Of a stretch of 64,000 nucleotides of DNA, positions 14,901-64,000 are shown piece by piece. The translations under genes and the position numbers were made by a program. The notes below the pieces were generated by a model that had not been told where the DNA came from, did no database searches, and saw only the letters and a list, made by a program, of their open reading frames with translations. The number at the start of each line of letters is the position of its first letter. Within the stretch, counting starts at the first letter, position 1. Origin of the DNA: Schmidtea nova (lineage: Eukaryota); NCBI GenBank assembly GCA_044892505.1, contig CM097883.1, positions 95,542,001-95,606,000 of the forward strand, in the 5' to 3' direction.

Positions 14901-17900
14901 TGTCGAAGTGGCAGGTGTGGCAGTTCCAGTAGTTACACTTTCTGAAGCAGTGGATGATTGTTGAGTTTGTTCAGTGGTATTGATATCAGTAGAAACTTGT
15001 TCACTAGTTACTTTCGATGATGAAGTGGTTTGTTCTTCAGTTGTCGAAGTGGCAGGTGTGGCAGTTCCAGTAGTTACACTTTCTGAAGCAGTGGATGATT
15101 GTTGAGTTTGTTCAGTGGTATTGATATCAGTTGAAACTTGTTCACTAGTTACTTTCGATGATGAAGTGGTTTGTTCTTCAGTTTTTGAAGTGGCAGGTGT
15201 GGCAGTTCCAGTAGTTACACTTTCTGAAGCAGTGGATGATTGTTGAGTTTGTTCAGTGGTATTGATATCAGTTGAAACTTGTTCACTAGTTACTTTCGAT
15301 GATGAAGTTGTTTGTTCTTCAGTTGTCGAAGTGGCAGGTGTGGCAGTTCCAGTAGTTACACTTTCTGAAGCAGTGGATGATTGTTGAGTTTGTTCAGTGG
15401 TATTGATATCAGTTGAAACTTGTTCACTTGTTACTTTCGATGGTGAAGTGGTTTGTTCTTCAGTTGTCGAAGTGGCAGGTGTGGCAGTTCCAGTAGTTAC
15501 ACTTTCTGAAGCAGTGGATGATTGTTGAGTTTGTTCAGTGGTATTGATATCAGTTGAAACTTGTTCACTAGTTACTTTCGATGATGAAGTGGTTTGTTCT
15601 TCAGTTGTCGAAGTGGCAGGTGTGGCAGTTCCAGTAGTTACACTTTCTGAAGCAGTGGATGATTGTTGAGTTTGTTCAGTGGTATTGAAATCAGTTGAAA
15701 CTTGTTCACTAGTTACTTTCGATGATGAAGTGGTTTGTTCTTCAGTTGTCGAAGTGGCAGGTGTGGCAGTTCCAGTAGTTACACTTTCTGAAGCAGTGGA
15801 TGATTGTTGAGTTTGTTCAGTGGTATTGATATCAGTTGAAACTTGTTCACTTGTTACTTTCGATGGTGAAGTGGTTTGTTCTTCAGTTGTCGAAGTGGCA
15901 GGTGTGGCAGTTCCAGTAGTTACACTTTCTGAAGCAGTGGATGATTGTTGAGTTTGTTCAGTGGTATTGATATCAGTTGAAACTTGTTCACTTGTTACTT
16001 TCGATGGTGAAGTGGTTCGTTCTTCAGTTGTCGAAGTGGCAGGTGTGGCAGTTCCAGTAGTTACACTTTCTGAAGCAGTGGATGATTGTTGAGTTTGTCC
16101 AGTGGTATTGATATCACTAGAAACTTGTTCACTAGTTACTTTCGATGATGAAGTGGTTTGTTCTTCAGTTTTTGAAGTGGCAGGTGTGGCAGTTCCAGTA
16201 GTTACACTTTCTGAAGCAGTGGATGATTGTTGAGTTTGTTCAGTGGTATTGATATCAGTTGAAACTTGTTCACTAGTTACTTTCGATGATGAAGTGGTTT
16301 GTTCTTCAGTTTTTGAAGTGGCAGGTGTGGCAGTTCCAGTAGTTACACTTTCTGAAGCAGTGGATGATTGTTGAGTTTGTTCAGTGGTATTGATATCAGT
16401 TGAAACTTGTTCACTTGTTACTTTCAATGGTGAAGTTGTTTGTTCTTCAGTTGTCGAAGTGACAGGTGTGGCAGTTCCAGTAGTTACACTTTCTGAAGCA
16501 GTGGATGATTGTTGAGTTTGTTCAGTGGTATTGATATCAGTTGAAACTTGTTCACTAGTTACTTTCGATGATGAAGTGGTTTGTTCTTCAGTTTTTGAAG
16601 TGGCAGGTGTGGCAGTTCCAGTAGTTACACTTTCTGAAGCAGTGGATGATCGTTGAGTTTGTTCAGTGGTATTGATATCAGTTGAAACTTGTTCACTTGT
16701 TACTTTCGATTGTGAAGTGGTTTGTTCTTCAGTTTTTGAAGTGGCAGGTGTGGCAGTTCCAGTAGTTACACTTTCTGAAGCAGTGGATGATTGTTGAGTT
16801 TGTTCAGTAGTATTGATATCAGTTGAAACTTGTTCACTTGTTACTTTCAATGGTGAAGTTGTTTGTTCTTCAGTTTTTGAAGTGACAGGTGTGGCAGTTC
16901 CAGTAGTTACACTTTCTGAAGCAGTGGATGATTGTTGAGTTTGTTCAGTGGTATTGATATCAGTTGAAACTTGTTCACTTGTTACTTTCGATGGTGAAGT
17001 GGTTTGTTCTTCAGTTGTCGAAGTGGCAGGTGTGGCAGTTCCAGTAGTTACACTTTCTGAAGCAGTGGATGATTGTTGAGTTTGTTCAGTGGTATTGATA
17101 TCAGTTGAAACTTGTTCACTTGTTACTTTCGATGGTGAAGTGGTTTGTTCTTCAGTTGTCGAAGTGGCAGGTGTGGCAGTTCCAGTAGTTACACTTTCTG
17201 AAGCAGTGGATGATTGTTGAGTTTGTTCAGTGGTATTGATATCAGTTGAAACTTGTTCACTTGTTACTTTCGATGGTGAAGTGGTTCGTTCTTCAGTTGT
17301 CGAAGTGGCAGGTGTGGCAGTTCCAGTAGTTACACTTTCTGAAGCAGTGGATGATTGTTGAGTTTGTCCAGTGGTATTGATATCACTAGAAACTTGTTCA
17401 CTAGTTACTTTCGATGATGAAGTGGTTTGTTCTTCAGTTTTTGAAGTGGCAGGTGTGGCAGTTCCAGTAGTTACACTTTCTGAAGCAGTGGATGATTGTT
17501 GAGTTTGTTCAGTGGTATTGATATCAGTTGAAACTTGTTCACTAGTTACTTTCGATGATGAAGTGGTTTGTTCTTCAGTTTTTGAAGTGGCAGGTGTGGC
17601 AGTTCCAGTAGTTACACTTTCTGAAGCAGTGGATGATTGTTGAGTTTGTTCAGTGGTATTGATATCAGTTGAAACTTGTTCACTTGTTACTTTCAATGGT
17701 GAAGTTGTTTGTTCTTCAGTTGTCGAAGTGACAGGTGTGGCAGTTCCAGTAGTTACACTTTCTGAAGCAGTGGATGATTGTTGAGTTTGTTCAGTGGTAT
17801 TGATATCAGTTGAAACTTGTTCACTAGTTACTTTCGATGATGAAGTGGTTTGTTCTTCAGTTTTTGAAGTGGCAGGTGTGGCAGTTCCAGTAGTTACACT

Positions 17901-20900
17901 TTCTGAAGCAGTGGATGATCGTTGAGTTTGTTCAGTGGTATTGATATCAGTTGAAACTTGTTCACTTGTTACTTTCGATTGTGAAGTGGTTTGTTCTTCA
18001 GTTTTTGAAGTGGCAGGTGTGGCAGTTCCAGTAGTTACACTTTCTGAAGCAGTGGATGATTGTTGAGTTTGTTCAGTAGTATTGATATCAGTTGAAACTT
18101 GTTCACTTGTTACTTTCAATGGTGAAGTTGTTTGTTCTTCAGTTTTTGAAGTGACAGGTGTGGCAGTTCCAGTAGTTACACTTTCTGAAGCAGTGGATGA
18201 TTGTTGAGTTTGTTCAGTGGTATTGATATCAGTAGAAACTTGTTCACTTGTTACTTTCGATGATGAAGTGGTTTGTTCTTCAGTTTTTGAAGTGGCAGGT
18301 GTGGCAGTTCCAGTAGTTACACTTTCTGAAGCAGTGGATGATTGTTGAGTTTGTTCAGTGGTATTGATATCAGTTGAAACTTGTTCACTTGTTACTTTCG
18401 ATGATGAAGTGGTTTGTTCTTCAGTTTTTGAAGTGGCAGGTGTGGCAGTTCCAGTAGTTAGACTTTCTGAAGCAGTGGATGATTGTTGAGTTTGTTCAGT
18501 GGTATTGATATCAGTAGAAACTTGTTCACTAGTTACTTTCGATGATGAAGTGGTTTGTTCTTCAGTTTTTGAAGTGGCAGGTGTGGCAGTTCCAGTAGTT
18601 ACACTTTCTGAAGCAGTGGATGATTGTTGAGTTTGTTCAGTGGTATTGATATCAGTTGAAACTTGTTCACTTGTTACTTTCGATTGTGAAGTGGTTTGTT
18701 CTTCAGTTTTTGAAGTGGCAGGTGTGGCAGTTCCAGTAGTTACACTTTCTGAAGCAGTGGATGATTGTTGAGTTTGTTCAGTGGTATTGATATCAGTAGA
18801 AACTTGTTCACTTGTTACTTTCGATGATGAAGTGGTTTGTTCTTCAGTTTTTGAAGTGGCAGGTGTGGCAGTTCCAGTAGTTACACTTTCTGAAGCAGTG
18901 GATGATTGTTGAGTTTGTTCAGTAGTATTGATATCAGTTGAAACTTGTTCACTTGTTACTTTCGATGGTGAAGTGGTTTGTTCTACAGTTTTTGAAGTGT
19001 CAGGTGTGGCAGTTCCAGTAGTTACACTTTCTGAAGCAGTGGATGATTGTTGAGTTTGTTCAGTGGTATTGATATCAGTTGAAACTTGTTCACTTGTTAC
19101 TTTCGATGGTGAAGTGGTTTGTTCTTCAGTTTTTGAAGTGGCAGGTGTTGCAGTTCCAGTAGTTACACTTTCTGAAGCAGTGGATGATTGTTGAGTTTGT
19201 TCAGTGGTATTGATATCAGTTGAAACTTGTTCACTTGTTACTTTCAATGGTGAAGTTGTTTGTTCTTCAGTTTTTGAAGTGGCAGGTGTGGCAGTTCCAG
19301 TAGTTACACTTTCTGAAGCAGTGGATGATTGTTGAGTTTGTTCAGTGGTATTGAAATCAGTTGAAACTTGTTCACTAGTTACTTTCGATGATGAAGTGGT
19401 TTGTTCTTCAGTTGTCGAAGTGGCAGGTGTGGCAGTTCCAGTAGTTACACTTTCTGAAGCAGTGGATGATTGTTGAGTTTGTTCAGTGGTATTTATATCA
19501 GTAGAAACTTGTTCACTTGTTACTTTCGATGATGAAGTGGTTTGTTCAGTTGTCAAAGTCTCAGGTGTGGCAGTTCCAGTAGTTACACTTTCTGAAGCAG
19601 TGGATGATTGTTGAGTTTGTTCAGTGGTATTGATATCAGTAGAAACTTGTTCACTTGTTACTTTCGATGATGAAGTGGTTTGTTCTTCAGTTTTTGAAGT
19701 GACAGGTGTGGCATTTCCAGTAGTTACACTTTCTGAAGCAGTGGATGATTGTTGAGTTTGTTCAGTGGTATTGATATCAATTGAAACTTGTTCACTTGTT
19801 ACTTTCGATGATGAAGTGGTTTGTTCAGTTGTCGAAGTCTCAGGTGTGGCAGTTCCAGTAGTTACACTTTCTGAAGCAGTGGATGATTGTTGAGTTTGTT
19901 CAGTGGTATTGATATCAGTTGAAACTTGTTCACTTGTTACTTTCGATTGTGAAGTGGTTTGTTCTTCAGTTTTTGAAGTGGCAGGTGTGGCAGTTCCAGT
20001 AGTTACACTTTCTGAAGCAGTGGATGATTGTTGAGTTTGTTCAGTGGTATTGATATCAGTAGAAACTTGTTCACTTGTTACTTTCGATGATGAAGTGGTT
20101 TGTTCTTCAGTTTTTGAAGTGGCAGGTGTGGCAGTTCCAGTAGTTACACTTTCTGAAGCAGTGGATGATTGTTGAGTTTGTTCAGTGGTATTGATATCAG
20201 TTGAAACTTGTTCACTTGTTACTTTCGATGATGAAGTGGTTTGTTCTTCAGTTTTTGAAGTGGCAGGTGTGGCAGTTCCAGTAGTTACACTTTCTGAAGC
20301 AGTGGATGATTGTTGAGTTTGTTCAGTGGTATTGATATCAGTTGAAACTTGTTCACTTGTTACTTTCGATGGTGAAGTGGTTTGTTCTTCAGTTTTTGAA
20401 GTGGCAGGTGTTGCAGTTACAGTAGTTACACTTTCTGAAGCAGTGGATGATTGTTGAGTTTGTTCAGTGGTATTGATATCAGTTGAAACTTGTTCACTTG
20501 TTACTTTCGATGGTGAAGTGGTTTGTTCTTCAGTTGTCGAAGTGGCAGGTGTGGCAGTTCCAGTAGTTACACTTTCTGAAGCAGTGGATGATTGTTGAGT
20601 TTGTTCAGTGGTATTGATATCAGTAGAAACTTGTTCACTAGTTACTTTCGATGATGAAGTGGTTTGTTCTTCAGTTTTTGAAGTGGCAGGTGTGGCAGTT
20701 CCAGTAGTTACACTTTCTGAAGCAGTGGATGATTGTTGAGTTTGTTCAGTGGTATTGATATCAGTTGAAACTTGTTCACTTGTTACTTTCAATGGTGAAG
20801 TTGTTTGTTCTTCAGTTGTCGAAGTGGCAGGTGTGGCAGTTCCAGTAGTTACACTTTCTGAAGCAGTGGATGATTGTTGAGTTTGTTCAGTGGTATTGAT

Positions 20901-23900
20901 ATCAGTTGAAACTTGTTCACTTGTTACTTTCAATGGTGAAGTTGTTTGTTCTTCAGTTGTCGAAGTGGCAGGTGTGGCAGTTCCAGTAGTTACACTTTCT
21001 GAAGCAGTGGATGATTGTTGAGTTTGTTCAGTGGTATTGATATCAGTTGAAACTTGTTCACTTGTTACTTTCGATGGTGAAGTGGTTTGTTCTTCAGTTG
21101 TCGAAGTGGCAGGTGTGGCAGTTCCAGTAGTTACACTTTCTGAATCAGTGGATGATTGTTGAGTTTGTTCAGTGGTATTGATATCAGTAGAAACTTGTTC
21201 ACTAGTTACTTTCGATGATGAAGTGGTTTGTTCTTCAGTTTTTGAAGTGGCAGGTGTGGCAGTTCCAGTAGTTACACTTTCTGAAGCAGTGGATGATTGT
21301 TGAGTTTGTTCAGTGGTATTGATATCAGTTGAAACTTGTTCACTTGTTACTTTCGATTGTGAAGTGGTTTGTTCTTCAGTTTTTGAAGTGGCAGGTGTGG
21401 CAGTTCCAGTAGTTACACTTTCTGAAGCAGTGGATGATTGTTGAGTTTGTTCAGTGGTATTGATATCAGTTGAAACTTGTTCACTTGTTACTTTCAATGG
21501 TGAAGTTGTTTGTTCTTCAGTTGTCGAAGTGGCAGGTGTGGCAGTTCCAGTAGTTACACTTTCTGAAGCAGTGGATGATTGTTGAGTTTGTTCAGTGGTA
21601 TTGATATCAGTTGAAACTTGTTCACTTGTTACTTTCGATGGTGAAGTGGTTTGTTCTTCACTTGTCGAAGTGGCAGGTGTGGCAGTTCCATTAGTTACAC
21701 TTTCTGAAGCAGTGGATGATTGTTGAGTTTGTTCAGTGGTATTGATATCAGTAGAAACTTGTTCACTAGTTACTTTCGATGATGAAGTGGTTTGTTCTTC
21801 AGTTTTAGAAGTGGCAGGTGTGGCAGTTCCAGTAGTTACACTTTCTGAAGCAGTGGATGATTGTTGAGTTTGTTCAGTGGTATTGATATCAGTTGAAACT
21901 TGTTCACTTGTTACTTTCGATTGTGAAGTGGTTTGTTCTTCAGTTTTTGAAGTGGCAGGTGTGGCAGTTCCAGTAGTTACACTTTCTGAAGCAGTGGATG
22001 ATTGTTGAGTTTGTTCAGTGGTATTGATATCAGTAGAAACTTGTTCACTTGTTACTTTCGATGATGAAGTGGTTTGTTCTTCAGTTTTTGAAGTGGCAGG
22101 TGTGGCAGTTCCAGTAGTTACACTTTCTGAAGCAGTGGATGATTGTTGAGTTTGTTCAGTGGTATTGATATCAGTTGAAACTTGTTCACTTGTTACTTTC
22201 AATGGTGAAGTTGTTTGTTCTTCAGTTGTCGAAGTGGCAGGTGTGGCAGTTCCAGTAGTTACACTTTCTGAAGCAGTGGATGATTGTTGAGTTTGTTCAG
22301 TGGTATTGATATCAGTTGAAACTTGTTCACTTGTTACTTTCGATGGTGAAGTGGTTTGTTCTTCAGTTGTCGAAGTGGCAGGTGTGGCAGTTCCAGTAGT
22401 TACACTTTCTGAAGCAGTGGATGATTGTTGAGTTTGTTCAGTGGTATTGATATCAGTAGAAACTTGTTCACTTGTTACTTTCGATGATGAAGTGGTTTGT
22501 TCTTCAGTTTTTGAAGTGGCAGGTGTGGCAGTTCCAGTAGTTACACTTTCTGAAGCAGTGGATGATTGTTGAGTTTGTTCAGTGGTATTGATATCAGTTG
22601 AAACTTGTTCACTTGTTACTTTCGATGGTGAAGTGGTTTGTTCTTCAGTTGTCGAAGTGGCAGGTGTGGCAGTTCCAGTAGTTACACTTTCTGAAGCAGT
22701 GGATGATTGTTGAGTTTGTTCAGTGGTATTGATATCAGTAGAAACTTGTTCACTAGTTACTTTCGATGATGAAGTGGTTTGTTCTTCAGTTTTTGAAGTG
22801 GCAGGTGTGGCAGTTCCAGTAGTTACACTTTCTGAAGCAGTGGATGATTGTTGAGTTTGTTCAGTGGTATTGATATCAGTTGAAACTTGTTCACTTGTTA
22901 CTTTCGATTGTGAAGTGGTTTGTTCTTCAGTTTTTGAAGTGGCAGGTGTGGCAGTTCCAGTAGTTACACTTTCTGAAGCAGTGGATGATTGTTGAGTTTG
23001 TTCAGTGGTATTGATATCAGTTGAAACTTGTTCACTTGTTACTTTCAATGGTGAAGTTGTTTGTTCTTCAGTTGTCGAAGTGGCAGGTGTCGCAGTTCCA
23101 GTAGTTACACTTTCTGAAGCAGTGGATGATTGTTGAGTTTGTTCAGTGGTATTGATATCAGTTGAAACTTGTTCACTTGTTACTTTCGATGGTGAAGTGG
23201 TTTGTTCTTCAGTTGTCGAAGTGGCAGGTGTGGCAGTTCCAGTAGTTACACTTTCTGAAGCAGTGGATGATTGTTGAGTTTGTTCAGTGGTATTGATATC
23301 AGTAGAAACTTGTTCACTAGTTACTTTCGATGATGAAGTGGTTTGTTCTTCAGTTTTTGAAGTGGCAGGTGTGGCAGTTCCAGTAGTTACACTTTCTGAA
23401 GCAGTGGATGATTGTTGAGTTTGTTCAGTGGTATTGATATCAGTTGAAACTTGTTCACTTGTTACTTTCGATTGTGAAGTGGTTTGTTCTTCAGTTTTTG
23501 AAGTGGCAGGTGTGGCAGTTCCAGTAGTTACACTTTCTGAAGCAGTGGATGATTGTTGAGTTTGTTCAGTGGTATTGATATCAGTTGAAACTTGTTCACT
23601 TGTTACTTTCAATGGTGAAGTTGTTTGTTCTTCAGTTGTCGAAGTGGCAGGTGTGGCAGTTCCAGTAGTTACACTTTCTGAAGCAGTGGATGATTGTTGA
23701 GTTTGTTTAGTGGTATTGATATCAGTTGAAACTTGTTCACTTGTTACTTTCGATGGTGAAGTGGTTTGTTCTTCAGTTGTCGAAGTGGCAGGTGTGGCAG
23801 TTCCAGTAGTTACACTTTCTGAAGCAGTGGATGATTGTTGAGTTTGTTCAGTGGTATTGATATCAGTAGAAACTTGTTCACTTGTTACTTTCGATGATGA

Positions 23901-26900
23901 AGTGGTTTGTTCTTCAGTTTTTGAAGTGGCAGGTGTGGCAGTTCCAGTAGTTACACTTTCTGAAGCAGTGGATGATTGTTGAGTTTGTTCAGTGGTATTG
24001 ATATCAGTTGAAACTTGTTCACTTGTTACTTTCAATGGTGAAGTTGTTTGTTCTTCAGTTGTCGAAGTTGCAGGTGTGGCAGTTCCAGTAGTTACACTTT
24101 CTGAAGCAGTGGATGATTGTTGAGTTTGTTCAGTGGTATTGATATCAGTTGAAACTTGTTCACTTGTTACTTTCGATGGTGAAGTGGTTTGTTCTTCAGT
24201 TTGTGAAGTGGCAGGTGTTGCAGTTCCAGTAGTTACACTTTCTGAAGCAGTGGATGATTGTTGAGTTTGTTCAGTGGTATTGATATCAGTTGAAAGTTGT
24301 TCACTTGTTACTTTCGATTGTGAAGTGGTTTGTTCTTCAGTTTTTGAAGTGGCAGGTGTGGCAGTTCCAGTAGTTACACTTTCTGAAGCAGTGGATGATT
24401 GTTGAGTTTGTTCAGTGGTATTGATATCAGTTGAAACTTGTTCACTTGTTACTTTCGATGATGAAGTGGTTTGTTCTTCAGTTTTTGAAGTGGCAGGTGT
24501 GGTAGTTCCAGTAGTTACACTTTCTGAAGCAGTGGATGATTGTTGAGTTTGTTCAGTGGTATTTATATCAGTAGAAACTTGTTCACTTGTTACTTTCGAT
24601 GATGAAGTGGTTTGTTCTTCAGTTTTTGAAGTGACAGGTGTGGCATTTCCAGTAGTTACACTTTCTGAAGCAGTGGATGATTGTTGAGTTTGTTCAGTGG
24701 TATTGATATCAATTGAAACTTGTTCACTTGTTACTTTCGATGATGAAGTGGTTTGTTCAGTTGTCGAAGTCTCAGGTGTGGCAGTTCCAGTAGTTACACT
24801 TTCTGAAGCAGTGGATGATTTTTGAGTTTGTTCAGTGGTATTGATATCAGTTGAAACTTGTTCACTTGTTACTTTCGATTGTGAAGTGGTTTGTTCTTCA
24901 GTTTTTGAAGTGGCAGGTGTGGCAGTTCCAGTAGTTACACTTTCTGAAGCAGTGGATGATTGTTGAGTTTGTTCAGTGGTATTGATATCAGTAGAAACTT
25001 GTTCACTTGTTACTTTCGATGATGAAGTGGTTTGTTCTTCAGTTTTTGAAGTGGCAGGTGTGGCAGTTCCAGTAGTTACACTTTCTGAAGCAGTGGATGA
25101 TTGTTGAGTTTGTTCAGTGGTATTGATATCAGTTGAAACTTGTTCACTTGTTACTTTCAATGGTGAAGTTGTTTGTTCTTCAGTTGTCGAAGTGGCAGGT
25201 GTGGCAGTTCCAGTAGTTACACTTTCTGAAGCAGTGGATGATTGTTGAGTTTGTTCAGTGGTATTGATATCAGTTGAAACTTGTTCACTTGTTACTTTCG
25301 ATGGTGAAGTGGTTTGTTCTTCAGTTGTCGAAGTGGCAGGTGTGGCAGTTCCAGTAGTTACACTTTCTGAAGCAGTGGATGATTGTTGAGTTTGTTCAGT
25401 GGTATTGATATCAGTAGAAACTTGTTCACTTGTTACTTTCGATGATGAAGTGGTTTGTTCTTCAGTTTTTGAAGTGGCAGGTGTGGCAGTTCCAGTAGTT
25501 ACACTTTCTGAAGCAGTGGATGATTGTTGAGTTTGTTCAGTGGTATTGATATCAGTTGAAACTTGTTCACTTGTTACTTTCAATGGTGAAGTTGTTTGTT
25601 CTTCAGTTGTCGAAGTTGCAGGTGTGGCAGTTCCAGTAGTTACACTTTCTGAAGCAGTGGATGATTGTTGAGTTTGTTCAGTGGTATTGATATCAGTTGA
25701 AACTTGTTCACTTGTTACTTTCGATGGTGAAGTGGTTTGTTCTTCAGTTTGTGAAGTGGCAGGTGTTGCAGTTCCAGTAGTTACACTTTCTGAAGCAGTG
25801 GATGATTGTTGAGTTTGTTCAGTGGTATTGATATCAGTTGAAAGTTGTTCACTTGTTACTTTCGATTGTGAAGTGGTTTGTTCTTCAGTTTTTGAAGTGG
25901 CAGGTGTGGCAGTTCCAGTAGTTACACTTTCTGAAGCAGTGGATGATTGTTGAGTTTGTTCAGTGGTATTGATATCAGTTGAAACTTGTTCACTAGTTAC
26001 TTTCGATGATGAAGTGGTTTGTTCTTCAGTTTTTGAAGTGGCAGGTGTGGCAGTTCCAGTAGTTACACTTTCTGAAGCAGTGGATGATTGTTGAGTTTGT
26101 TCAGTGGTATTGATATCAGTTGAAACTTGTTCACTTGTTACTTTCGATGATGAAGTGGTTTGTTCTTCAGTTTTTGAAGTGGCAGGTGTGGTAGTTCCAG
26201 TAGTTACACTTTCTGAAGCAGTGGATGATTGTTGAGTTTGTTCAGTGGTATTTATATCAGTAGAAACTTGTTCACTTGTTACTTTCGATGATGAAGTGGT
26301 TTGTTCTTCAGTTTTTGAAGTGACAGGTGTGGCATTTCCAGTAGTTACACTTTCTGAAGCAGTGGATGATTGTTGAGTTTGTTCAGTGGTATTGATATCA
26401 ATTGAAACTTGTTCACTTGTTACTTTCGATGATGAAGTGGTTTGTTCAGTTGTCGAAGTCTCAGGTGTGGCAGTTCCAGTAGTTACACTTTCTGAAGCAG
26501 TGGATGATTGTTGAGTTTGTTCAGTGGTATTGATATCAGTAGAAACTTGTTCACTTGTTACTTTCGATGATGAAGTGGTTTGTTCTTCAGTTTTTGAAGT
26601 GGCAGGTGTGACAGTTCCAGTAGTTACACTTTCTGAAGCAGTGGATGATTGTTGAGTTTGTTCAGTGGTATTGATATCAGTTGAAACTTGTTCACTTGTT
26701 ACTTTCGATGATGAAGTTGTTTGTTCTTCAGTTGTCGAAGTGGCAGGTGTGGCAGTTCCAGTAGTTACACTTTCTGAAGCAGTGGATGATTGTTGAGTTT
26801 GTTCAGTGGTATTGATATCAGTTGAAACTTGTTCACTTGTTACTTTCGATGGTGAAGTGGTTTGTTCTTCAGTTTTTGAAGTGGCAGGTGTTGCAGTTCC

Positions 26901-29900
26901 AGTAGTTACACTTTCTGAAGCAGTGGATGATTGTTGAGTTTGTTCAGTGGTATTGATATCAGTTGAAACTTGTTCACTTGTTACTTTCAATGGTGAAGTT
27001 GTTTGTTCTTCAGTTGTCGAAGTGGCAGGTGTGGCAGTTCCAGTAGTTACACTTTCTGAAGCAGTGGATGATTGTTGAGTTTGTTCAGTGGTATTGATAT
27101 CAGTTGAAACTTGTTCACTTGTTACTTTCAATGGTGAAGTTGTTTGTTCTTCAGTTGTCGAAGTGGCAGGTGTGGCAGTTCCAGTAGTTACACTTTCTGA
27201 AGCAGTGGATGATTGTTGAGTTTGTTCAGTGGTATTGATATCAGTTGAAACTTGTTCACTTGTTACTTTCGATGATGAAGTGGTTTGTTCAGTTGTCGAA
27301 GTCTCAGGTGTGGCAGTTCCAGTAGTTACACTTTCTGAAGCAGTGGATGATTGTTGAGTTTGTTCAGTGGTATTGATATCAGTAGAAACTTGTTCACTTG
27401 TTACTTTCGATGATGAAGTGGTTTGTTCTTCAGTTTTTGAAGTGACAGGTGTGGCAGTTCCAGTAGTTACACTTTCTGAAGCAGTGGATGATTGTTGAGT
27501 TTGTTCAGTGGTATTGATATCAGTTGAAACTTGTTCACTTGTTACTTTCGATTGTGAAGTGGTTTGTTCTTCAGTTTTTGAAGTGGCAGGTGTGGCAGTT
27601 CCAGTAGTTACACTTTCTGAAGCAGTGGATGATTGTTGAGTTTGTTCAGTGGTATTGATATCAGTAGAAACTTGTTCACTTGTTACTTTCGATGATGAAG
27701 TGGTTTGTTCTTCAGTTTTTGAAGTGGCAGGTGTGGCAGTTCCAGTAGTTACACTTTCTGAAGCAGTGGATGATTGTTGAGTTTGTTCAGTGGTATTGAT
27801 ATCAGTTGAAACTTGTTCACTTGTTACTTTCGATGATGAAGTTGTTTGTTCTTCAGTTGTCGAAGTGGCAGGTGTGGCAGTTCCAGTAGTTACACTTTCT
27901 GAAGCAGTGGATGATTGTTGAGTTTGTTCAGTGGTATTGATATCAGTTGAAACTTGTTCACTTGTTACTTTCGATGGTGAAGTGGTTTGTTCTTCAGTTT
28001 TTGAAGTGGCAGGTGTTGCAGTTCCAGTAGTTACACTTTCTGAAGCAGTGGATGATTGTTGAGTTTGTTCAGTGGTATTGATATCAGTTGAAACTTGTTC
28101 ACTTGTTACTTTCAATGGTGAAGTTGTTTGTTCTTCAGTTGTCGAAGTGGCAGGTGTGGCAGTTCCAGTAGTTACACTTTCTGAAGCAGTGGATGATTGT
28201 TGAGTTTGTTCAGTGGTATTGATATCAGTTGAAACTTGTTCACTTGTTACTTTCAATGGTGAAGTTGTTTGTTCTTCAGTTGTCGAAGTGGCAGGTGTGG
28301 CAGTTCCAGTAGTTACACTTTCTGAAGCAGTGGATGATTGTTGAGTTTGTTCAGTGGTATTGATATCAGTTGAAACTTGTTCACTTGTTACTTTCGATGG
28401 TGAAGTGGTTTGTTCTTCAGTTTTTGAAGTGGCAGGTGTGGCAGTTCCAGTAGTTACACTTTCTGAAGCAGTGGATGATTGTTGAGTTTGTTCAGTGGTA
28501 TTGATATCAGTTGAAACTTGTTCACTTGTTACTTTCGATGATGAAGTGGTCTGTTCTTCAGTTGACGAAGTGGCAGGTGTGGGAGTTCCAGTAGTTATAC
28601 TTTCTGAAGCAGTGGATGATTGTTGAGTTTGTTCAGTGGTATTGATATCAGTTGAAACTTGTTCACTTGTTACTTTCGATGATGAAGTGGTTTGTTCTTC
28701 AGTTGACGAAGTGGCAGGTGTGGGAGTTCCAGTAGTTACACTTTCTGAAGCAGTGGATGATTGTTGAGTTTGTTCAGTGGTATTGATATCAGTTGAAACT
28801 TGTTCACTTGTTACTTTCGATGATGAAGTAGTTTGTTCTTCACTTTTTGAAGTGGCAGGAGTGGCAGTTCCAGTAGTTACACTTTCTGAAGCAGTGGATG
28901 ATTGTTGAGTTTGTTCAGTGGTATTGATATCAGTTGAAACTTGTTCACTTGTTACTTTCGATGATGAAGTAGTTTGTTCTTCACTTGTTGAAGTGGCAGG
29001 AGTGGCAGTTCCAGTAGTTACACTTTCTGAAGCAGTGGATATTTGTTGAGTTGTTTTGCTTTTTGGTTGATATTTTTTTGTCGTTATTTCAATTGATGAT
29101 TGAATTGGTTTCATAGTAGTTGTCTTTTCCTTTTCTTTTGTCGTTTTTATATTTTGTTTTACTGTTGTGGTTTTTTGAATTCTCTTTGTCGTACGTCTTA
29201 TTTGTGGTCTTCTGAAATCTTTTATTTTTCTTACTTTAGGTATTCTTTTTGGTATTTTGTTTATTGTAATGAATCCTCTAGTTACTTTTTGTGGTTTTGT
29301 TACTTTTTCTTTTGCTTTTACTTTTATTGTTTCATATATTATGTCTGTTACATCTCTATATGCTTCTCTGGTTCTATTGACCTGACGGACCCCTATAATA
29401 TAATCGTCTGTAACTGCTTTGTATTTTTCATAATCATGTATTAAGGATGTGTCGTTTCTATTACTATCTGGATTCCTTTCGAGTATTTCCTTCAATTCTT
29501 CATCTTCTAATTTCGTCATATTGCAAAAGCTGCAATTGTTCCTATTCAATATGTCTCGGGCAACATCATGTGCGGTTGGATTGTCGTATGTTTTGTTATT
29601 TGCAAATTTGTGCGAACGATATTCGTCAACAATATGCAATGGGAGTTTTTTTCCATTTTCTGCCAATATTACTTTTCTATGATTTTCAGGACCTGGGGTT
29701 CCTAATATGTCTGGCAATTTTATTATCTGAGTTGGCTTGTGAATGGGAGGTATTTCGAAAATTTTCGTAAAGATTTCATATTCGTCGTCGCTTATGTTTA
29801 ATTGTTTCATGATATCTTTTAAGATTTTCGCATATTCGGTGCTGTTTGAAATCTTCCAGAACATTACTTGCACGTTATCATTTGTTGAAATGTTGTTTGC

Positions 29901-30661
29901 TTTCGCATAAAGATACTTCACAAGTTCATTTTTTACGTGCTTTAGAAACTTCTGGTAATCTTCATTGTTATTTGTAAGATTCTTTGGTACGTCTATTTTT
30001 GGGAATTCAATATATACTGTCTTTCTTTGATTCGGGTTTATTACACCTAAACAATAAATTATTATATTTTTATTAATACATTTTCTACTCACCGTGCTTT
30101 TTCATTTCTCTGACAATGATCTTTTGCAGCCTTACTGTAATCTCAACTATTTCGTCGTATTTGGATTTGGATTTCTGTATTTTCATGTACAGTTTAATAT
30201 TCGATGCATCATTCGAATCAGAACTGTATATGATGTCACCTTGTTTTTTCAATTCATCGCCTATCCGTTTTCTAATTACTTCTCTAAGCAACCTGATTGT
30301 CTTTTCATCACTGAGCTTTCCAGATTTATTAATATAAAAGCTTAATTTTTTTAAGTCGACTTTTGGAGGTTCGCTTTTGATAAATCCTAAAGTTAGATTA
30401 ATTCTTTGTGAATTTGTGATGGGATTTATTTCCATACCTAAATTTTCCAATTCTTTATCAACAAGGTAAGTAATGATTTCCTTGATTTTCAAGTATTCCT
30501 TTTGCAATTTCACCTGTTCGACAGAATCTTGTCCTTGTATCTGACTGGCTGTGCCGTAAATACCTAAATACAAAAATGTTTAGAAATTTATAAGCTTTTC
30601 CCATCTGTGAATACTCACATAATATGAACCATGTTAAACCCAAAATTGTGGATTTATACAT
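11933..30661 (-). CDS. Giant secreted mucin with two C-terminal hemopexin-like modules (paralogue 1, ~6,050-6,100 aa, ~12 exons)
   Basis: Exon 1 30661-30619 + exon 2 30563-30093 give signal peptide MYKSTILGLTWFILCIYGTAS. Exon 3 30046-13790 is a stop-free 16.3-kb frame. Downstream exons 13743-13576, 13525-13371, 13322-~13142 etc. are separated by 45-56 bp GT-AG introns. Hemopexin-like DSMFFDERIQKIIFFK and ADSLFFDPNRNELVAFK; ends ...HYSIEC-stop at 11933. Confidence 0.85.
14335..29040 (-). repeat. Coding tandem array, 141-bp unit (47 aa: STASESVTTGTATPATSKTEEQTTSSSKVTSEQVSTDINTTEQTQQS), ~104 copies
   Basis: Period measured at 141 bp (gtggcag at 14353 and 14494); a few 138-bp units lack one Glu codon; frame preserved throughout. 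Confidence 0.97.
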
Positions 30662-38673: not shown

Positions 38674-38802
38674 NNNNNNNNNNNNNNNNNNNNNNNNNNN
38701 NNNNNNNNNNNNNNNNNNNNNNNNNNNNNNNNNNNNNNNNNNNNNNNNNNNNNNNNNNNNNNNNNNNNNNNNNNNNNNNNNNNNNNNNNNNNNNNNNNNN
38801 NN
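38674..38802. other. Assembly gap (N run)
   Basis: 129 N. Confidence 1.
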
Positions 38803-58055: not shown

Positions 58056-61000
58056 TCAGCAGCCGAAATAAGTATGAATATTTTCACATGCTTTTTCTTG
58101 GAATTTGAAAGTAGTATCACGGCGTCCAACTGGTTTACCAATGTAAATCCTTTAACAATTGTTAAATAAATTATTAGTGAATATGTATTACTTTTCATTT
58201 GAAACGATAGCTAATTGATTGATTCCTTTATCTTGTTGAAGAAATGAAGTTATAATTTCTGGAATATTTTTCGAATCAAATTTAATAAAGTCATTCATGT
58301 TCTTGTAATTAGATGAAAACGTAACATCGTTGCCTTTAATATAACCAGCAAGTAATTGATTTTCCTGAATAATCCAGAACACTATTGACTTTCCATATAA
58401 ATTTCTGTAAAATGAATTTTGAGTTTTGCCAATAAATAATCCTTTTTCTTTGATATTCAATTCTATAATAGTAAGATTTTTGAAATCAGCACCCATCACT
58501 TTAAGCACGCTTTTTCCTTGAAATGCGATAAGATGATTTCCTATTGGATCGTAGAAAATTGAATCGATATTGCAAAGTCGTTTGTCCAATGAAACAAGAC
58601 TGAAACTATTATCTATTGTATTGTTCTTGATTTTCATAATAAAGTTATCTCGGGTGATTATAAATGATTCATTATGGAAGTCTGAAAATATTTACAATAA
58701 TCATTTTTTGAAAATTATACCGTTAGTGTGATTATATGAGCGCATAGTGTCTGTCAATTTTCAATAGAAGATTTTACATTTTTTTATGCGTTTTATAGAT
58801 TCATTTTATTTTTTTTTTATTCATTTATTTATTCAATTTTAGACTCAATTTTGATGTAAAAAACATTCAAAAAATAAAAGAATATTTGAACTAATCATAT
58901 CTATACCAGTATTTCACTTAATCACCTTGTTATTCTTTATTTCGCTTAGTGAAAGGAAATCTTGATAACAAAAATAATTTTTTTAAACAGCTTTAAACTT
59001 TGTTCAAGGATCAATAATATAACTCAACATCAAAATTGGTTTCAATCTTTCTAAAACTTTTGTTTATTGCTAGCATGAAGGTACAATTTCCTAACAGCTG
59101 ATACTTATTTGAGGGAAGTTACTTCTAATTATTAAAAATAAACTATTCAATTTATTTAAATTGATATCTTACACCTCGTATCACACTAATAATATTTAAT
59201 ATGAACAGATTCAACTGATAATGAAATCAGTTAGATTATTCTCAGTGCTATTCCTCCTTTTCTGATAGTATTTGTAAAGAAAATAAATATTTCAGACTTA
59301 CAATTAAATGACAATTTTATTGATTGATTTTCACAGAAAATTCTTTTACTCGAAGATTCAATACTCAAATTGTTATCTGATCTCCAACACCTAAAGATAT
59401 GTTTATTAAAAATAAAAAAGAAAACTGAATTTTTACTTAATGAAATCATTGATAAATTGAGTTGAAATTTTAGATTTATTTTCCAGACTGATAATTCTAA
59501 AGAAATACTGATAAAAATATTTAAAAAAGAAAAAAATTAACTTGTCATCTTCAATAAAATAAAGTATTTGCTGTTTCTTTCCCAGCTTAAATGCTCCATT
59601 TATATTAACTGAAGAGAGTATATTCTTCTTCAGACGCAAGGCCTTATCGAGAGACACTTCTTGATCGGAAAACTTGATACTTTTACCATGTAAATTTCCT
59701 TGGACAGCTTTACCATTCTGAAAAATTGAAATATTGTAAATATCTTTATGAGGGAATTGTAGTTTACTTGAATAACCCAGAAAGACGAAGCGGTTTTAGA
59801 AACTTGATTCATGTGAACAACGGCTGATACAGAACCCTTGAATGAACCCCTATATGTAACATTTAAATGTTCGATTTTCAAGTTTGATACGCAATCGCCT
59901 TCAGCCGAAAATATTTCGTCACCTAAATCAGAAAGTCGAAAAATGAATATATGAAAATCAGCATACCGGAGAACACAATCAACTTTTGTATATCTTCATT
60001 GAAGTAAATCGCGTCAGCATTATGTAATTTTTGATCCAATAATTTAGGCATGAAGGTATTGTCAATAGTCCCGTTTTCGTTTAACTTGAACACCTTCTTA
60101 TCAGTTGAAATGATGTAGGTAACGTCATCGCGGTCTATAGGGAGAAGGACAATAATCAAAACTAAATTATAAAAAAGGCTTACAATTAAAAGCATTGAGT
60201 AAAATTTGACTTCGACACCATTCGTCGGCAAACGATCTAAACGCAACTTGATTTCCGTAATAATATGTATTTTTATTATTAATATTGTTTTGGATAGTTA
60301 TCGGGCTGGCTCCCAGTTTCCATTCTCGCGTTTCGTAATGAGTAGAATTCTGTATGGATTCAATCTTCGCGATTTGCTTCTCATCATTGATGTTGTATAT
60401 AATAATATTATTGACGTTACTACTGTGGCCGTTACTTTGGATGTTAATATTAAGGGCGGACCTAGATCTCTCTCTAACCTGCAGCCACTTCTCGTAATGT
60501 GAATAAATATCAAATTCGTAATGAGAACAGTTAGGAAGATGTATATGACTTGGAGGAGGACAAGTATGTGGCACACAAGGTGGTGGCGGTGGAGGATTAT
60601 ATTTAGGTAGAGGAGGGCAAGTACATACGCTGGGGGCAGGAGTCGTTACTTTGGCTAGTTCCACAGTTGTCGAGGAGGCAGATGTGGCAGTTCCAGTAGT
60701 TACACTTTCTGAAGCAGTGGATGATTGTTGAGTTTGTTCAGTGGTATTGATATCAGTAGAAACTTGTTCACTAGTTACTTTCGATGATGAAGTGGTTTGT
60801 TCTTCAGTTGTCGAAGTGGCAGGTGTGGCAGTTCCAGTAGTTACACTTTCTGAAGCAGTGGATGATTGTTGAGTTTGTTCAGTGGTATTGATATCAGTTG
60901 AAACTTGTTCACTTGTTACTTTCGATGATGAAGTGGTTTGTTCTTCAGTTGTCGAAGTGGCAGGTGTGGCAGTTCCAGTAGTTACACTTTCTGAAGCAGT

Positions 61001-64000
61001 GGATGATAGTTGAGTTTGTTCAGTGGTATTGATATCAGTTGAAACTTGTTCACTTGTTACTTTCGATAATGAAGTGGTTTGTTCTTCAGTTGTCGAAGTG
61101 GCAGGTGTGGCAGTTCCAGTAGTTACACTTTCTGAAGCAGTGGATGATTGTTGAGTTTGTTCAGTGGTATTGATATCAGTTGAAACTTGTTCACTTGTTA
61201 CTTTCGATGATGAAGTGGTCTGTTCTTCAGTTGTCGAAGTGGCAGGTGTGGCAGTTCCAGTAGTTACACTTTCTGAAGCAGTGGATGATTGTTGAGTTTG
61301 TTCAGTGGTATTGATATCAGTAGAAACTTGTTCACTAGTTACTTTCGATGATGAAGTGGTTTGTTCTTCAGTTGTCGAAGTGGCAGGTGTGGCAGTTCCA
61401 GTAGTTACACTTTCTGAAGCAGTGGATGATTGTTGAGTTTGTTCAGTGGTATTGAAATCAGTTGAAACTTGTTCACTAGTTACTTTCGATGATGAAGTGG
61501 TTTGTTCTTCAGTTGTCGAAGTGGCAGGTGTGGCAGTTCCAGTAGTTACACTTTCTGAAGCAGTGGATGATTGTTGAGTTTGTTCAGTGGTATTGAAATC
61601 AGTTGAAACTTGTTCACTAGTTACTTTCGATGATGAAGTGGTTTGTTCTTCAGTTGTCGAAGTGGCAGGTGTGGCAGTTCCAGTAGTTACACTTTCTGAA
61701 GCAGTGGATGATTGTTGAGTTTGTTCAGTGGTATTGATATCAGTTGAAACTTGTTCACTAGTTACTTTCGATGATGAAGTGGTTTGTTCTTCAGTTGTCG
61801 AAGTGGCAGGTGTGGCAGTTCCAGTAGTTACACTTTCTGAAGCAGTGGATGATTGTTGAGTTTGTTCAGTGGTATTGATATCAGTTGAAACTTGTTCACT
61901 AGTTACTTTCGATGATGAAGTGGTTTGTTCTTCAGTTGTCGAAGTGGCAGGTGTGGCAGTTCCAGTAGTTACACTTTCTGAAGCAGTGGATGATTGTTGA
62001 GTTTGTTCAGTGGTATTGAAATCAGTTGAAACTTGTTCACTAGTTACTTTCGATGATGAAGTGGTTTGTTCTTCAGTTGTCGAAGTGGCAGGTGTGGCAG
62101 TTCCAGTAGTTACACTTTCTGAAGCAGTGGATGATTGTTGAGTTTGTTCAGTGGTATTGATATCAGTTGAAACTTGTTCACTAGTTACTTTCGATGATGA
62201 AGTGGTTTGTTCTTCAGTTGTCGAAGTGGCAGGTGTGGCAGTTCCAGTAGTTACACTTTCTGAAGCAGTGGATGATTGTTGAGTTTGTTCAGTGGTATTG
62301 ATATCAGTTGAAACTTGTTCACTAGTTACTTTCGATGATGAAGTGGTTTGTTCTTCAGTTGTCGAAGTGGCAGGTGTGGCAGTTCCAGTAGTTACACTTT
62401 CTGAAGCAGTGGATGATTGTTGAGTTTGTTCAGTGGTATTGATATCAGTTGAAACTTGTTCACTAGTTACTTTCGATGATGAAGTGGTTTGTTCTTCAGT
62501 TGTCGAAGTGGCAGGTGTGGCAGTTCCAGTAGTTAGACTTTCTGAAGCAGTGGATGATTGTTGAGTTTGTTCAGTGGTATTGATATCAGTTGAAACTTGT
62601 TCACTAGTTACTTTCGATGATGAAGTGGTTTGTTCTTCAGTTGTCGAAGTGGCAGGTGTGGCAGTTCCAGTAGTTACACTTTCTGAAGCAGTGGATGATT
62701 GTTGAGTTTGTTCAGTGGTATTGATATCAGTTGAAACTTGTTCACTAGTTACTTTCGATGATGAAGTGGTTTGTTCTTCAGTTGTCGAAGTGGCAGGTGT
62801 GGCAGTTCCAGTAGTTACACTTTCTGAAGCAGTGGATGATTGTTGAGTTTGTTCAGTGGTATTGATATCAGTTGAAACTTGTTCACTAGTTACTTTCGAT
62901 GATGAAGTGGTTTGTTCTTCAGTTGTCGAAGTGGCAGGTGTGGCAGTTCCAGTAGTTACACTTTCTGAAGCAGTGGATGATTGTTGAGTTTGTTCAGTGG
63001 TATTGATATCAGTTGAAACTTGTTCACTAGTTACTTTCGATGATGAAGTGGTTTGTTCTTCAGTTGTCGAAGTGGCAGGTGTGGCAGTTCCAGTAGTTAC
63101 ACTTTCTGAAGCTGTGGATGATTGTTGAGTTTGTTCAGTGGTATTGATATCAGTTGAAACTTGTTCACTAGTTACTTTCGATGATGAAGTGGTTTGTTCT
63201 TCAGTTGTCGAAGTGGCAGGTGTGGCAGTTCCAGTAGTTACACTTTCTGAAGCAGTGGATGATTGTTGAGTTTGTTCAGTGGTATTGATATCAGTTGAAA
63301 CTTGTTCACTAGTTACTTTCGATGATGAAGTGGTTTGTTCTTCAGTTGTCGAAGGGGCAGGTGTGGCAGTTCCAGTAGTTAGACTTTCTGAAGCAGTGGA
63401 TGATTGTTGAGTTTGTTCAGTGGTATTGATATCAGTTGAAACTTGTTCACTAGTTACTTTCGATGATGAAGTGGTTTGTTCTTCAGTTGTCGAAGTGGCA
63501 GGTGTTGCAGTTCCAGTAGTTACACTTTCTGAAGCTGTGGATGATTGTTGAGTTTGTTCAGTGGTATTGATATCAGTTGAAACTTGTTCACTAGTTACTT
63601 TCGATGATGAAGTGGTTTGTTCTTCAGTTGTCGAAGTGGCAGGTGTGGCAGTTCCAGTAGTTACACTTTCTGAAGCAGTGGATGATTGTTGAGTTTGTTC
63701 AGTGGTATTGATATCAGTTGAAACTTGTTCACTAGTTACTTTCGATGATGAAGTGGTTTGTTCTTCAGTTGTCGAAGTGGCAGGTGTGGCAGTTCCAGTA
63801 GTTAGACTTTCTGAAGCAGTGGATGATTGTTGAGTTTGTTCAGTGGTATTGATATCAGTTGAAACTTGTTCACTAGTTACTTTCGATGATGAAGTGGTTT
63901 GTTCTTCAGTTGTCGAAGTGGCAGGTGTGGCAGTTCCAGTAGTTACACTTTCTGAAGCAGTGGATGATTGTTGAGTTTGTTCAGTGGTATTGATATCAGT
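58056..64000 (-). CDS. Giant mucin with two hemopexin-like modules, paralogue 2 (5' part outside the window)
   Basis: Repeat exon ends at 60184 (AFN|gtaag). Modules NADAIYFNEDIQKLIVFSG and NIDSIFYDPIGNHLIAFQG; last exon KIYIGKPVGRRDTTFKFQEKACENIHTYFGC-stop at 58056, matching the hemopexin terminal W/F-x-G-C. Confidence 0.85.
60665..64000 (-). repeat. Coding 141-bp tandem array, ~24 copies visible, highly homogeneous
   Basis: Same unit as 14335-29040; mostly the STTEEQTTSSSKVT variant. Confidence 0.97.

What the first reader, a model, noticed from the sequence alone, without database searches (positions are those of the whole stretch)
60665..64000. Paralogues share a near-identical repeat unit while their flanking domains are deeply diverged: inter-gene concerted evolution
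Seen: gene 2 units match gene 1 units almost base for base, including synonymous variants (ctagtt/cttgtt) and rare ones (DFNTT, ESLTT), and resemble most the C-terminal units of gene 1 (14700-15800). Yet the hinge and hemopexin exons align only at motif level, and the switch is abrupt at the array edge. Inference: ongoing gene conversion or recent transplant of the mucin array between old paralogues, i.e. a shared glyco-spacer cassette with variable binding heads.
Basis: partly seen in the sequence, partly recalled or inferred. Interest (0 to 1): 0.7.

Follow-up and report, generated by a model that had tools for sequence, protein, structure and literature searches.

The report
Two mucin genes sharing one repeat
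Two neighbouring giant slime-protein (mucin-like) genes of a planarian flatworm carry more than 100 copies each of the same 141-base repeat, almost letter for letter, although the rest of the two genes has drifted far apart. This shows that the repeat blocks have exchanged DNA between the genes, a process already known from other repeat-rich gene families.

Summary
Both genes lie on the minus strand. Gene 1 has 104 units of 141 bp (14329-29052). Gene 2 has 122 units: 60664-64000 in the window, running on to window-equivalent 77865. The unit occurs nowhere else in the 1.25-Gb genome.

- **Repeats versus flanks:** synonymous difference between the arrays is 0.06. In the homologous C-terminal exons it is 0.68, which is saturated, with 28-44% amino-acid identity. 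The N-terminal flanks show no similarity.
- **Edges:** identity collapses within about 10 bases at both array edges.
- **Nesting:** gene 2's array is a low-diversity subset of gene 1's variation. Of its 23 variants, 11 are shared (2-3 expected). Exact matches, the longest 408 bp, cluster in gene 1's last ~12 units.
- **Reads:** short-read contigs bridge each array to its own flank, and depth fits a few hundred units, so mis-assembly is very unlikely.

The best reading is homologous exchange between the arrays (gene conversion or unequal exchange), most recently at the 3' end, followed by separate amplification in each array. Whether exchange is continuing or was a single event cannot be settled from one genome.

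The phenomenon is known from schistosome SmPoMuc genes and spider silk genes, so this is a new member of a known kind. The scan had already noted gene 1 on this window (s1-359132); the relation between the two genes is new.

The parts
60664..64000 (-). Gene 2 mucin array, the part inside the window (23.7 of 122 units of 141 bp / 47 aa). The array continues to window-equivalent 77865 (L002, L005).
61775..62182 (-). Longest exact match between the two arrays (408 bp), identical to gene 1 15444-15851. It contains the rare DFNTT variant.
60167..60663 (-). Non-repeat tail of gene 2's giant exon, with the Cys/Pro 'hinge' (CTCPP ... CPPP). It matches gene 1 only at motif level.
59541..60138 (-). Gene 2 hemopexin-like module 1, three exons (59959-60138, 59759-59941, 59541-59717).
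58191..58691 (-). Gene 2 hemopexin-like module 2, one unspliced open frame of 167 aa. It is homologous to the C-terminal domain of Schmidtea mediterranea Mmp1 (E 1.3e-15). The AF2 model has pLDDT 85.5 and its best PDB matches are hemopexin-fold proteins.
14329..29052 (-). Gene 1 mucin array: 104 units and 51 unit types, with higher-order repeats.
14779..15860 (-). Gene 1 terminal block (units 93-100) that is gene 2-like. It holds the units identical to gene 2 types t5, t9, t18 and t0, and all but one of the exact matches of 200 bp or more.
13782..14328 (-). Non-repeat tail of gene 1's giant exon, with the Cys/Pro hinge.
13143..13747 (-). Gene 1 hemopexin-like module 1, three exons (13568-13747, 13362-13538, 13143-13322).
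12078..12682 (-). Gene 1 hemopexin-like module 2. It is split by introns (12506-12682 ... 12078-12314), unlike gene 2's module 2.
29053..30092 (-). N-terminal non-repeat part of gene 1's giant exon. It shows no similarity to gene 2's counterpart. Its last ~60 nt are a decayed, in-phase repeat unit.

Best explanation
Two same-strand neighbouring genes, 46 kb apart, each encode a giant Ser/Thr-rich (53% S+T) mucin-like protein. Each ends in a Cys/Pro hinge and two MMP-derived hemopexin-like modules. The hinge and modules come from an old duplication and have diverged to saturation. The two 15-17 kb repeat arrays have been kept, or made, alike by homologous exchange between the arrays. The likely route is repair of a break in one array using the other array as template (interlocus gene conversion), possibly with unequal exchange. 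Because only the arrays are alike enough to pair, exchange stops at their edges, which explains the abrupt switch. The most recent exchange involved the 3'-terminal ~12 units of gene 1. Since then each array has grown mainly by its own internal multi-unit duplications. Gene 2's array is dominated by one unit type (54 of 122 units). Shown here: the identity pattern, the sharp edges, the shared variants, the exact tract, and the linkage of each array to its own flank. Inferred: the mechanism, the direction, and whether exchange continues.
For: (1) Arrays versus flanks: pS between arrays is 0.062 and pN 0.023. Over 324 aligned codons of the C-terminal exons, pS is 0.68 and dN 0.63. The N-terminal flanks give no BLASTP hit, and no DNA similarity is found outside the arrays. 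(2) Sharp edges at both ends. (3) Mean difference between the arrays (4.78/141) equals that within gene 1 (4.79), while within gene 2 it is 1.65. Eleven of gene 2's 23 variants are shared with gene 1, against 2.3-3.0 expected (P about 2e-6); 7 of the 11 are transversions. (4) Nine of the 11 shared variants occur in gene 1 units 91-102. Units within 1 nt of a gene 2 unit cluster there (P about 1e-4). The longest exact match is 408 bp and spans the rare DFNTT variant, and 5 of the 6 exact matches of 200 bp or more lie in 15851-14779. (5) On a tree of all units the gene label changes 9 times, where 1 would mean separate clades and about 40 random mixing. (6) Both arrays sit in the same reading frame, 13-15 aa before the same CTCPP motif. 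(7) The 31-mer of the unit occurs 226 times in the genome, which equals 104 + 122, all on this strand. (8) Logan contigs of 4 runs (2 samples, 1 study) bridge gene 2's unique flank into its array, and loose ends show gene 1's own two edges. Depth rises from about 11 to 2200-2700 and from about 64 to about 12000. The gene 2-type base at unit position 8 makes up 42-50% of depth. That would be only 20% if gene 1's array alone existed. (9) A 997-bp metagenome contig (L011) is collinear with gene 1 at 54-70% aa identity but only 40% to gene 2, so the duplication is older than that species split.
Against: Only 4 of 74 unit types are shared. The commonest gene 1 variants are absent from all 122 gene 2 units: the Lys variant at positions 110/112, the 3-bp deletion, and the types t3, t6 and t8. 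Recent exchange has therefore been rare or one-directional. No multi-unit order is shared beyond about 3 units. GC3 of the unit is 0.17, so there is no sign of GC-biased conversion. The enrichment of shared variants in gene 1's last units is not significant on the count alone (P = 0.27). No long reads were available to span the arrays, no second species could be examined, and the reads may come from the very animals used for the assembly.
Confidence: 0.75

Rival explanations
1. One-off, non-homologous transplant. A piece of gene 1's 3'-terminal array was copied (segmental duplication or template switching) into a gene that had no related array, and then amplified to 122 units. No homologous interlocus exchange occurred before or since.
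For: Gene 2's array has low diversity and is nested within the variation of gene 1's last ~12 units. The decayed, in-phase relic unit is significant only at gene 1's 5' edge (P = 0.008), not at gene 2's. Gene 2's N-terminal half is of different origin: a dead MMP plus an extra hemopexin-like module.
Against: A random insertion would have to land in frame, in the same orientation, and 13-15 aa before the same CTCPP hinge as in gene 1. Gene 2's 3' edge unit tails off through a degenerate stretch of its own (VELAKVTT against EEQTTSSSKVTS), which suggests long residence. Both genes also share a basic Thr/Lys-rich lead-in.
Confidence: 0.17
2. Assembly artefact. Gene 2's array was built from gene 1 reads, or the two are mis-placed haplotypes of one locus.
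For: Arrays of 15-17 kb at 96-100% identity are hard to assemble. No spanning long reads could be examined. The exact copy numbers are unverified.
Against: The arrays differ in content: 47 unit types are private to gene 1 and 23 to gene 2, and gene 2's main type occurs once in gene 1. The flanks are unrelated in sequence, so the two are not haplotypes. Short-read contigs from two samples join each array edge to its own flank, depth fits a few hundred units, and the gene 2-type base makes up 42-50% of depth.
Confidence: 0.03
3. No exchange at all. The arrays are as old as the duplication and are kept alike by purifying selection, or the whole-gene duplication is recent and the flanks diverged very fast.
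For: pN/pS in the arrays is 0.37-0.47, so there is some constraint on the protein. Both other frames of the unit contain stops, and no frameshift occurs in 226 units.
Against: Selection on the protein cannot hold synonymous sites at pS 0.06 while neighbouring exons are saturated. Introns and intergenic DNA next to the arrays are unalignable. L011 shows that the flank divergence is old.
Confidence: 0.02

Closest known systems
SmPoMuc polymorphic mucins of the flatworm Schistosoma mansoni (PMC2576457)
   Same: A mucin-type gene family in a flatworm. Its tandem repeat units stay more than 93% identical within and between paralogous genes. The authors attribute this to concerted evolution by gene conversion and ectopic recombination.
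   Different: SmPoMuc repeats are 27-bp exons with their introns, repeated as genomic units, in about 10 genes at several loci, and the homogenised part is chiefly the intron. Here the unit is 141 bp of pure coding sequence inside one giant exon. There are two genes only, with more than 100 units each, and MMP-derived end domains. I found no sequence relationship to SmPoMuc.
Clustered major ampullate spidroin genes of Argiope (PMC9779670)
   Same: Tandemly clustered paralogues of giant repeat proteins. Homogenisation within a gene is extreme, and there is evidence of intergenic conversion reaching the repetitive region.
   Different: In spidroins the terminal domains are the conserved and often converted parts, and the repeats usually differ between paralogues. 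Here it is the reverse: the repeats are shared and the termini diverged or unrelated.
Lubricin / PRG4 and vitronectin (vertebrate hemopexin-domain glycoproteins); 'mucinisation' of non-mucin genes (PMC9417175)
   Same: A central O-glycosylation-type repeat domain is followed by a hemopexin-fold domain. Mucin function arises by gain of exonic Ser/Thr-rich repeats in a gene of another family.
   Different: No somatomedin-B domains were found. The hemopexin-like modules are closest to the planarian's own MMP, so the layout is convergent and does not indicate membership. Lubricin has no paralogue sharing its repeat.
Balbiani-ring secretory protein genes of Chironomus, Candida ALS and yeast FLO adhesins (from my own knowledge, not checked here)
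   Same: Paralogous genes for giant secreted or surface glycoproteins whose internal tandem repeats are homogenised between loci.
   Different: These are unrelated proteins and organisms. They are recalled from memory only.

Membership tests
Interlocus concerted evolution of a tandem-repeat domain | Repeats of two paralogues are far more alike than their flanking homologous sequence, at silent sites too. | tested here: met
   pS is 0.062 in the arrays and 0.68 in 324 flank codons. Introns are unalignable.
Interlocus concerted evolution of a tandem-repeat domain | Shared polymorphisms or identical tracts that mutation alone would not give. | tested here: met
   Eleven of 23 variants are shared against 2-3 expected. 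There is a 408-bp exact tract with a rare variant.
Interlocus concerted evolution of a tandem-repeat domain | Paralogous arrays within a species are closer to each other than to their orthologues in related species. | not testable with these tools
   No related animal genome is on hand. Metagenome scans for the unit and for gene 1's hinge found nothing. L011 covers only gene 1's C-terminal exons.
Interlocus concerted evolution of a tandem-repeat domain | Both arrays physically exist at separate loci. | tested here: met
   Contigs bridge both arrays' edges to their own flanks, and depth and the variant ratio fit two arrays. The interior was not spanned by long reads.
Mucin-type (PTS-domain) secreted glycoprotein | A long Ser/Thr(/Pro)-rich tandem repeat in one large exon. 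| tested here: met
   The 47-aa unit is 53% Ser+Thr with only 1-2 Pro. It occurs 104 and 122 times in single open exons.
Mucin-type (PTS-domain) secreted glycoprotein | Signal peptide, expression and O-glycosylation. | tested here: inconclusive
   Signal-like exons are seen by eye near 30661 for gene 1 and at window-equivalent 80320-80261 upstream of gene 2. No RNA run was found. Glycosylation is not testable here.
Hemopexin-like repeat domain (Pfam PF00045; MMP C-terminal domain) | A match to the Pfam hemopexin repeat model. | tested here: not met
   No hit on any exon at E <= 1. The genome-wide PF00045 search has no match in this locus.
Hemopexin-like repeat domain (Pfam PF00045; MMP C-terminal domain) | Homology to the domain that follows the catalytic domain of an MMP. 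| tested here: met
   Gene 2 module 2 matches S. mediterranea Mmp1 residues 299-458, after Matrixin 110-265, at E 1.3e-15. It also matches a second matrixin protein at E 1.1e-17.
Hemopexin-like repeat domain (Pfam PF00045; MMP C-terminal domain) | A four-bladed beta-propeller fold. | tested here: met
   The AF2 model has pLDDT 85.5 and is all-beta. The Foldseek top hits are hemopexin-fold albumins, hemopexin, MMP-1, MMP-14 and vitronectin, with TM 0.44-0.54 and E down to 7e-5. The match is moderate, not close.
Lubricin / PRG4 | N-terminal somatomedin-B domains and orthology to vertebrate PRG4. | tested here: not met
   Pfam finds nothing of the kind in the N-terminal parts. The nearest relatives are planarian MMPs. 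This is an analogue, not a member.

The most novel reading that the evidence does not exclude
The shared array may work as a recombination joint. The two genes have unrelated N-terminal halves: gene 2 apparently has signal peptide, dead MMP and an extra hemopexin-like module, while gene 1 has its own signal and a unique basic region. Their C-terminal halves are homologous. Crossing-over inside a common mucin array would be the way heads and tails are recombined into new giant mucins. On this reading the array is kept alike in both genes over long times (sustained concerted evolution, perhaps favoured so that both proteins present the same glycan brush).
Probability: 0.2. Interest if true: 0.55.

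Novelty: new member of a known kind. Interest (0 to 1): 0.4.

Why it matters
This is a clean and unusually large example: 226 units and 32 kb of coding repeat. A repeat domain can evolve as a unit shared between genes while the surrounding domains diverge freely. For planarian biology it marks two candidate mucus proteins built on MMP-derived hemopexin-like modules. For genome annotation it is a warning that gene trees made from such arrays would date the duplication far too recently. It does not open a new question, because the process is known from schistosome mucins, silk genes and adhesins.

Tried and rejected
- **Pfam on single exons and PDB sequence searches:** no hemopexin hit. The label had to be rescued by an exhaustive protein search and a fold model.
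- **Word-index protein search with gene 1's N-terminus plus two units:** nothing in the allowed length range, so no annotated orthologue was found.
- **Genome search with 3 units as DNA:** too many candidates to score. It was replaced by a 31-mer pattern.
- **Metagenome scans for the unit and for gene 1's hinge:** nothing.
- **GC-biased conversion signature:** absent, GC3 0.17.
- **Permutation test of how many shared variants fall in gene 1's last units:** not significant on its own (P = 0.27). The clustering of near-identical units and the exact tracts are significant.
- **Decayed relic units at the edges:** significant only at gene 1's 5' edge. The gene 2 3' test overlapped still-homologous bases and is uninformative.
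- **RNA evidence:** no RNA run holds the locus.
- **Rejected readings:** mis-assembly, haplotype duplication, selection-only conservation, and a recent whole-gene duplication.
- **Not done, by rule:** exons were never joined into a spliced model for any search or fold. Searches were made exon by exon by reference. The fold used the unspliced 167-aa open frame of gene 2's module 2, with other exons as separate alignment rows. The N stretches (38674-38802, 51465-51713, 57179-57701) were left untouched.
Full report
**What is there.** The window is G000:C2:95542001-95606000 of a 1.25-Gb, AT-rich animal genome. Tandem Repeats Finder reports a 141-bp array at 14329-29052 (104.5 copies) and a second at 60664-64000 that runs off the window. 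Both are read on the minus strand. Gene 1's array sits in one open frame of 5436 aa (30092..13782). I fetched the DNA beyond the window (L002, L005). Gene 2's array ends at window-equivalent 77865 and has 122 units in one open frame of 6096 aa (78457..60167). The 47-aa unit is 53% Ser+Thr and acidic, with one or two Pro, so it is a mucin-type sequence. A 31-mer of the unit, allowing 2 mismatches, occurs 226 times in the whole genome. That equals 104 + 122, and all hits are on this strand, so the unit family is confined to these two arrays.

I cut both arrays into units in register. There are 74 distinct unit sequences: 51 in gene 1, 27 in gene 2, and 4 shared.
- Of the 23 in-window gene 2 units, 14 are identical to a gene 1 unit and 8 differ by 1-2 nt.
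- Over the full array, 65 of 120 core units are identical to a gene 1 unit.
- The named variants are real and present in both arrays: synonymous ACT/ACA at position 8, DFNTT and ESLTT.
- The identical units of gene 1 are units 93, 94, 95 and 98 (15860-15015).
- Seven of the eight consecutive units 92-99 are within 1 nt of a gene 2 unit (permutation P about 1e-4).
- The longest exact match between the arrays is 408 bp (gene 1 15851-15444 = gene 2 62182-61775) and carries the rare DFNTT variant. Five of the six exact matches of 200 bp or more lie in 15851-14779.

**The flanks.**
- Outside the arrays, blastn finds only the 68 bp at the array edge and one 80-bp stretch at 72%. Nothing is found upstream.
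- The N-terminal parts of the giant exons give no BLASTP similarity.
- After the array both genes have a Cys/Pro motif (CTCPP ... CPPP) 13-15 aa downstream, but they are otherwise unalignable.
- Further downstream both genes have the same layout, two modules of about 170 aa, which align collinearly at 28-44% amino-acid identity.
- Counted exon by exon with the counts summed over 324 codons, pS is 0.68 (saturated) and dN is 0.63.
- Between the arrays pS is 0.062 and pN is 0.023.
- Alignments across both edges show about 98% identity that collapses within some 10 bases.
- The 3' edges are in nearly the same unit phase in both genes, while the 5' edges differ by about half a unit.
- A 997-bp metagenome contig (L011) is collinear with gene 1 13424-12428. 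It is 54-70% identical to gene 1 in amino acids but only 40% to gene 2, so the duplication predates that species split.

**What the end domains are.**
- Pfam and PDB sequence searches on single exons found nothing. PF00045 has no match at this locus.
- An exhaustive HMMER search with the unspliced 167-aa frame of gene 2's module 2 found Schmidtea mediterranea Mmp1 at E 1.3e-15. The match covers residues 299-458, after its Matrixin domain. A second matrixin protein matched at E 1.1e-17.
- An AF2 model of that frame, with other exons as separate alignment rows, has pLDDT 85.5 and is all-beta. Its best PDB matches are hemopexin-fold proteins, namely plant albumin-2, hemopexin, MMP-1, MMP-14 and vitronectin, at TM 0.44-0.54.
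- 'Hemopexin-like' is therefore supported by homology and by fold, not by the Pfam model.
- The best hit points to a planarian. Another agent's note names Schmidtea nova (s1-405661); I did not verify the species.

**Is it an artefact?**
- The arrays are not copies of each other. Forty-seven unit types are private to gene 1 and 23 to gene 2, and gene 2's main type (54 of 122 units) occurs once in gene 1.
- Four public runs hold the locus, as Logan contigs from one study and two samples. They look like DNA, because depth is even over introns.
- Their contigs run from gene 2's unique flank 92 nt into its array: 58839-60756, 59534-60756 and 60282-60756.
- Loose ends on array contigs show gene 1's own 3' and 5' junction sequences.
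- Depth rises from about 11 to 2200-2700, and from about 64 to about 12000. That corresponds to some 180-450 units depending on how overlapping contigs are summed, which is the order of 226.
- The gene 2-type base at unit position 8 makes up 42-50% of depth. The assembly gives 59%; gene 1's array alone would give 20%.
- These runs may be from the animals used for the assembly. No long reads were offered, so the interior order and the exact copy numbers remain unverified.

**How the arrays relate.**
- Mean difference between the arrays (4.78 per 141) equals that within gene 1 (4.79), while gene 2 is much more uniform (1.65). Gene 2's array is therefore a low-diversity subset nested in gene 1's variation.
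- Eleven of gene 2's 23 variants also occur in gene 1, against 2.3-3.0 expected under independent mutation (P about 2e-6). Seven of the 11 are transversions.
- Nine of these 11 occur in gene 1 units 91-102. The other two are singleton transitions that could be recurrent.
- On a tree of all units the gene label changes 9 times, where 1 would mean two clean clades and about 40 random mixing.
- The commonest gene 1 variants are absent from all 122 gene 2 units: the Lys variant, the 3-bp deletion, and the types t3, t6 and t8.
- Both arrays show their own higher-order repeats of about seven units. At present, amplification within each array far outweighs exchange between them.

**Mechanism.**
- The silent-site and intron contrast excludes selection alone and excludes a recent whole-gene duplication.
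- Homologous exchange between the arrays explains the sharp edges, the shared variants on different backgrounds, the 408-bp tract and the common frame. The likely forms are gene conversion during break repair, with out-of-register copying, or unequal exchange.
- A simple crossover between direct repeats 46 kb apart would delete or triplicate the interval, so non-crossover conversion is the more economical reading.
- Homologous exchange needs similar partners. Both arrays also sit in frame just before the same hinge. I therefore think the array predates the duplication and has been kept alike ever since, with the last exchange at the 3' end.
- A single non-homologous transfer from gene 1's end into gene 2, followed by amplification, is the main rival at about 0.17. 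It is favoured by gene 2's low diversity and by the fact that a decayed relic unit is significant only at gene 1's 5' edge.
- There is no GC-biased conversion signature.

**Comparison and novelty.** Homogenisation of repeats between paralogues is described for the schistosome SmPoMuc mucins (PMC2576457) and for clustered Argiope spidroins (PMC9779670). Gain of mucin repeats by genes of other families is described in PMC9417175. This locus is a new and very large member of that kind. Unusually, the repeats are shared while both termini are diverged or unrelated. Gene 1 had already been noted by this scan (s1-359132), and my independent tests agree that its tail modules are MMP-derived.

**Limits.** The analysis rests on one genome, with no RNA, no long reads and no sister species. 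Exons were never joined for any search or fold, and the phase check of gene 2's upstream exons used arithmetic on separate exons only. N stretches were left alone.

Noticed in passing
L005:6416-8320 (window-equivalent 78416-80320), minus strand, just beyond the window: Directly upstream of gene 2's giant exon lie five features. (1) A signal-peptide-like ORF. (2) A Matrixin domain (Pfam 33.2 bits, E 5.7e-8; 31% identity to S. mediterranea Mmp1) whose zinc motif HExxHxxGxxH is degenerate (HFIGVALGTVD), so it is probably catalytically dead. (3) A third hemopexin-like module (L005 6661-7254). (4) Two mini-exons (L005 6577-6612 and 6462-6524). (5) An acceptor at L005 6416. All three introns are phase 2 and every exon is open in the matching frame. 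Gene 2 is therefore probably one gene: signal, dead MMP, module, 122-unit mucin array, hinge, two modules. Gene 1 has no MMP part. RNA evidence is needed.
   Followed up: partly
window 58107-58191: Similarity of gene 2's module 2 to Mmp1 continues past its stop codon (YIGKPVGRR against YVGKPTGRK of Mmp1). Either a short intron follows or the last strand was cut off by a stop.
   Followed up: no
window 60698, 60699, 60726: Contigs that bridge into gene 2's edge unit carry three differences from the assembly in runs X2-X4, while X1 (same sample as X3 and X4) matches the assembly. This indicates allelic variation in the edge unit. X2 (the other sample) differs at 14 of 1918 flank positions, about 0.7%.
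   Followed up: no
window 3435-6299 (+) and 10021-10990 (+): A Ty3/gypsy-type retrotransposon pol frame (RNase H, integrase zinc finger, integrase core) and a second, fragmented integrase copy lie downstream of gene 1. A large unannotated 876-aa ORF (6232-8862) beside it has no Pfam match.
   Followed up: partly
L011 (JGI metagenome 3300031718, 997 bp) against window 12428-13424: An environmental contig from a related flatworm is collinear with gene 1's C-terminal exons and the linker between the two modules. The linker stretches 13099-13010 and 12813-12709 are conserved as coding sequence.
   Followed up: partly
window 12506-12314 against 58691-58191: Module 2 is intron-free in gene 2 but split by at least two introns in gene 1. 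Introns were gained or lost since the duplication.
   Followed up: no
L005:8609-9751 and L003:617-1297: Long TTA/AAT microsatellites (up to 224 copies) lie upstream of the gene 2 locus.
   Followed up: no
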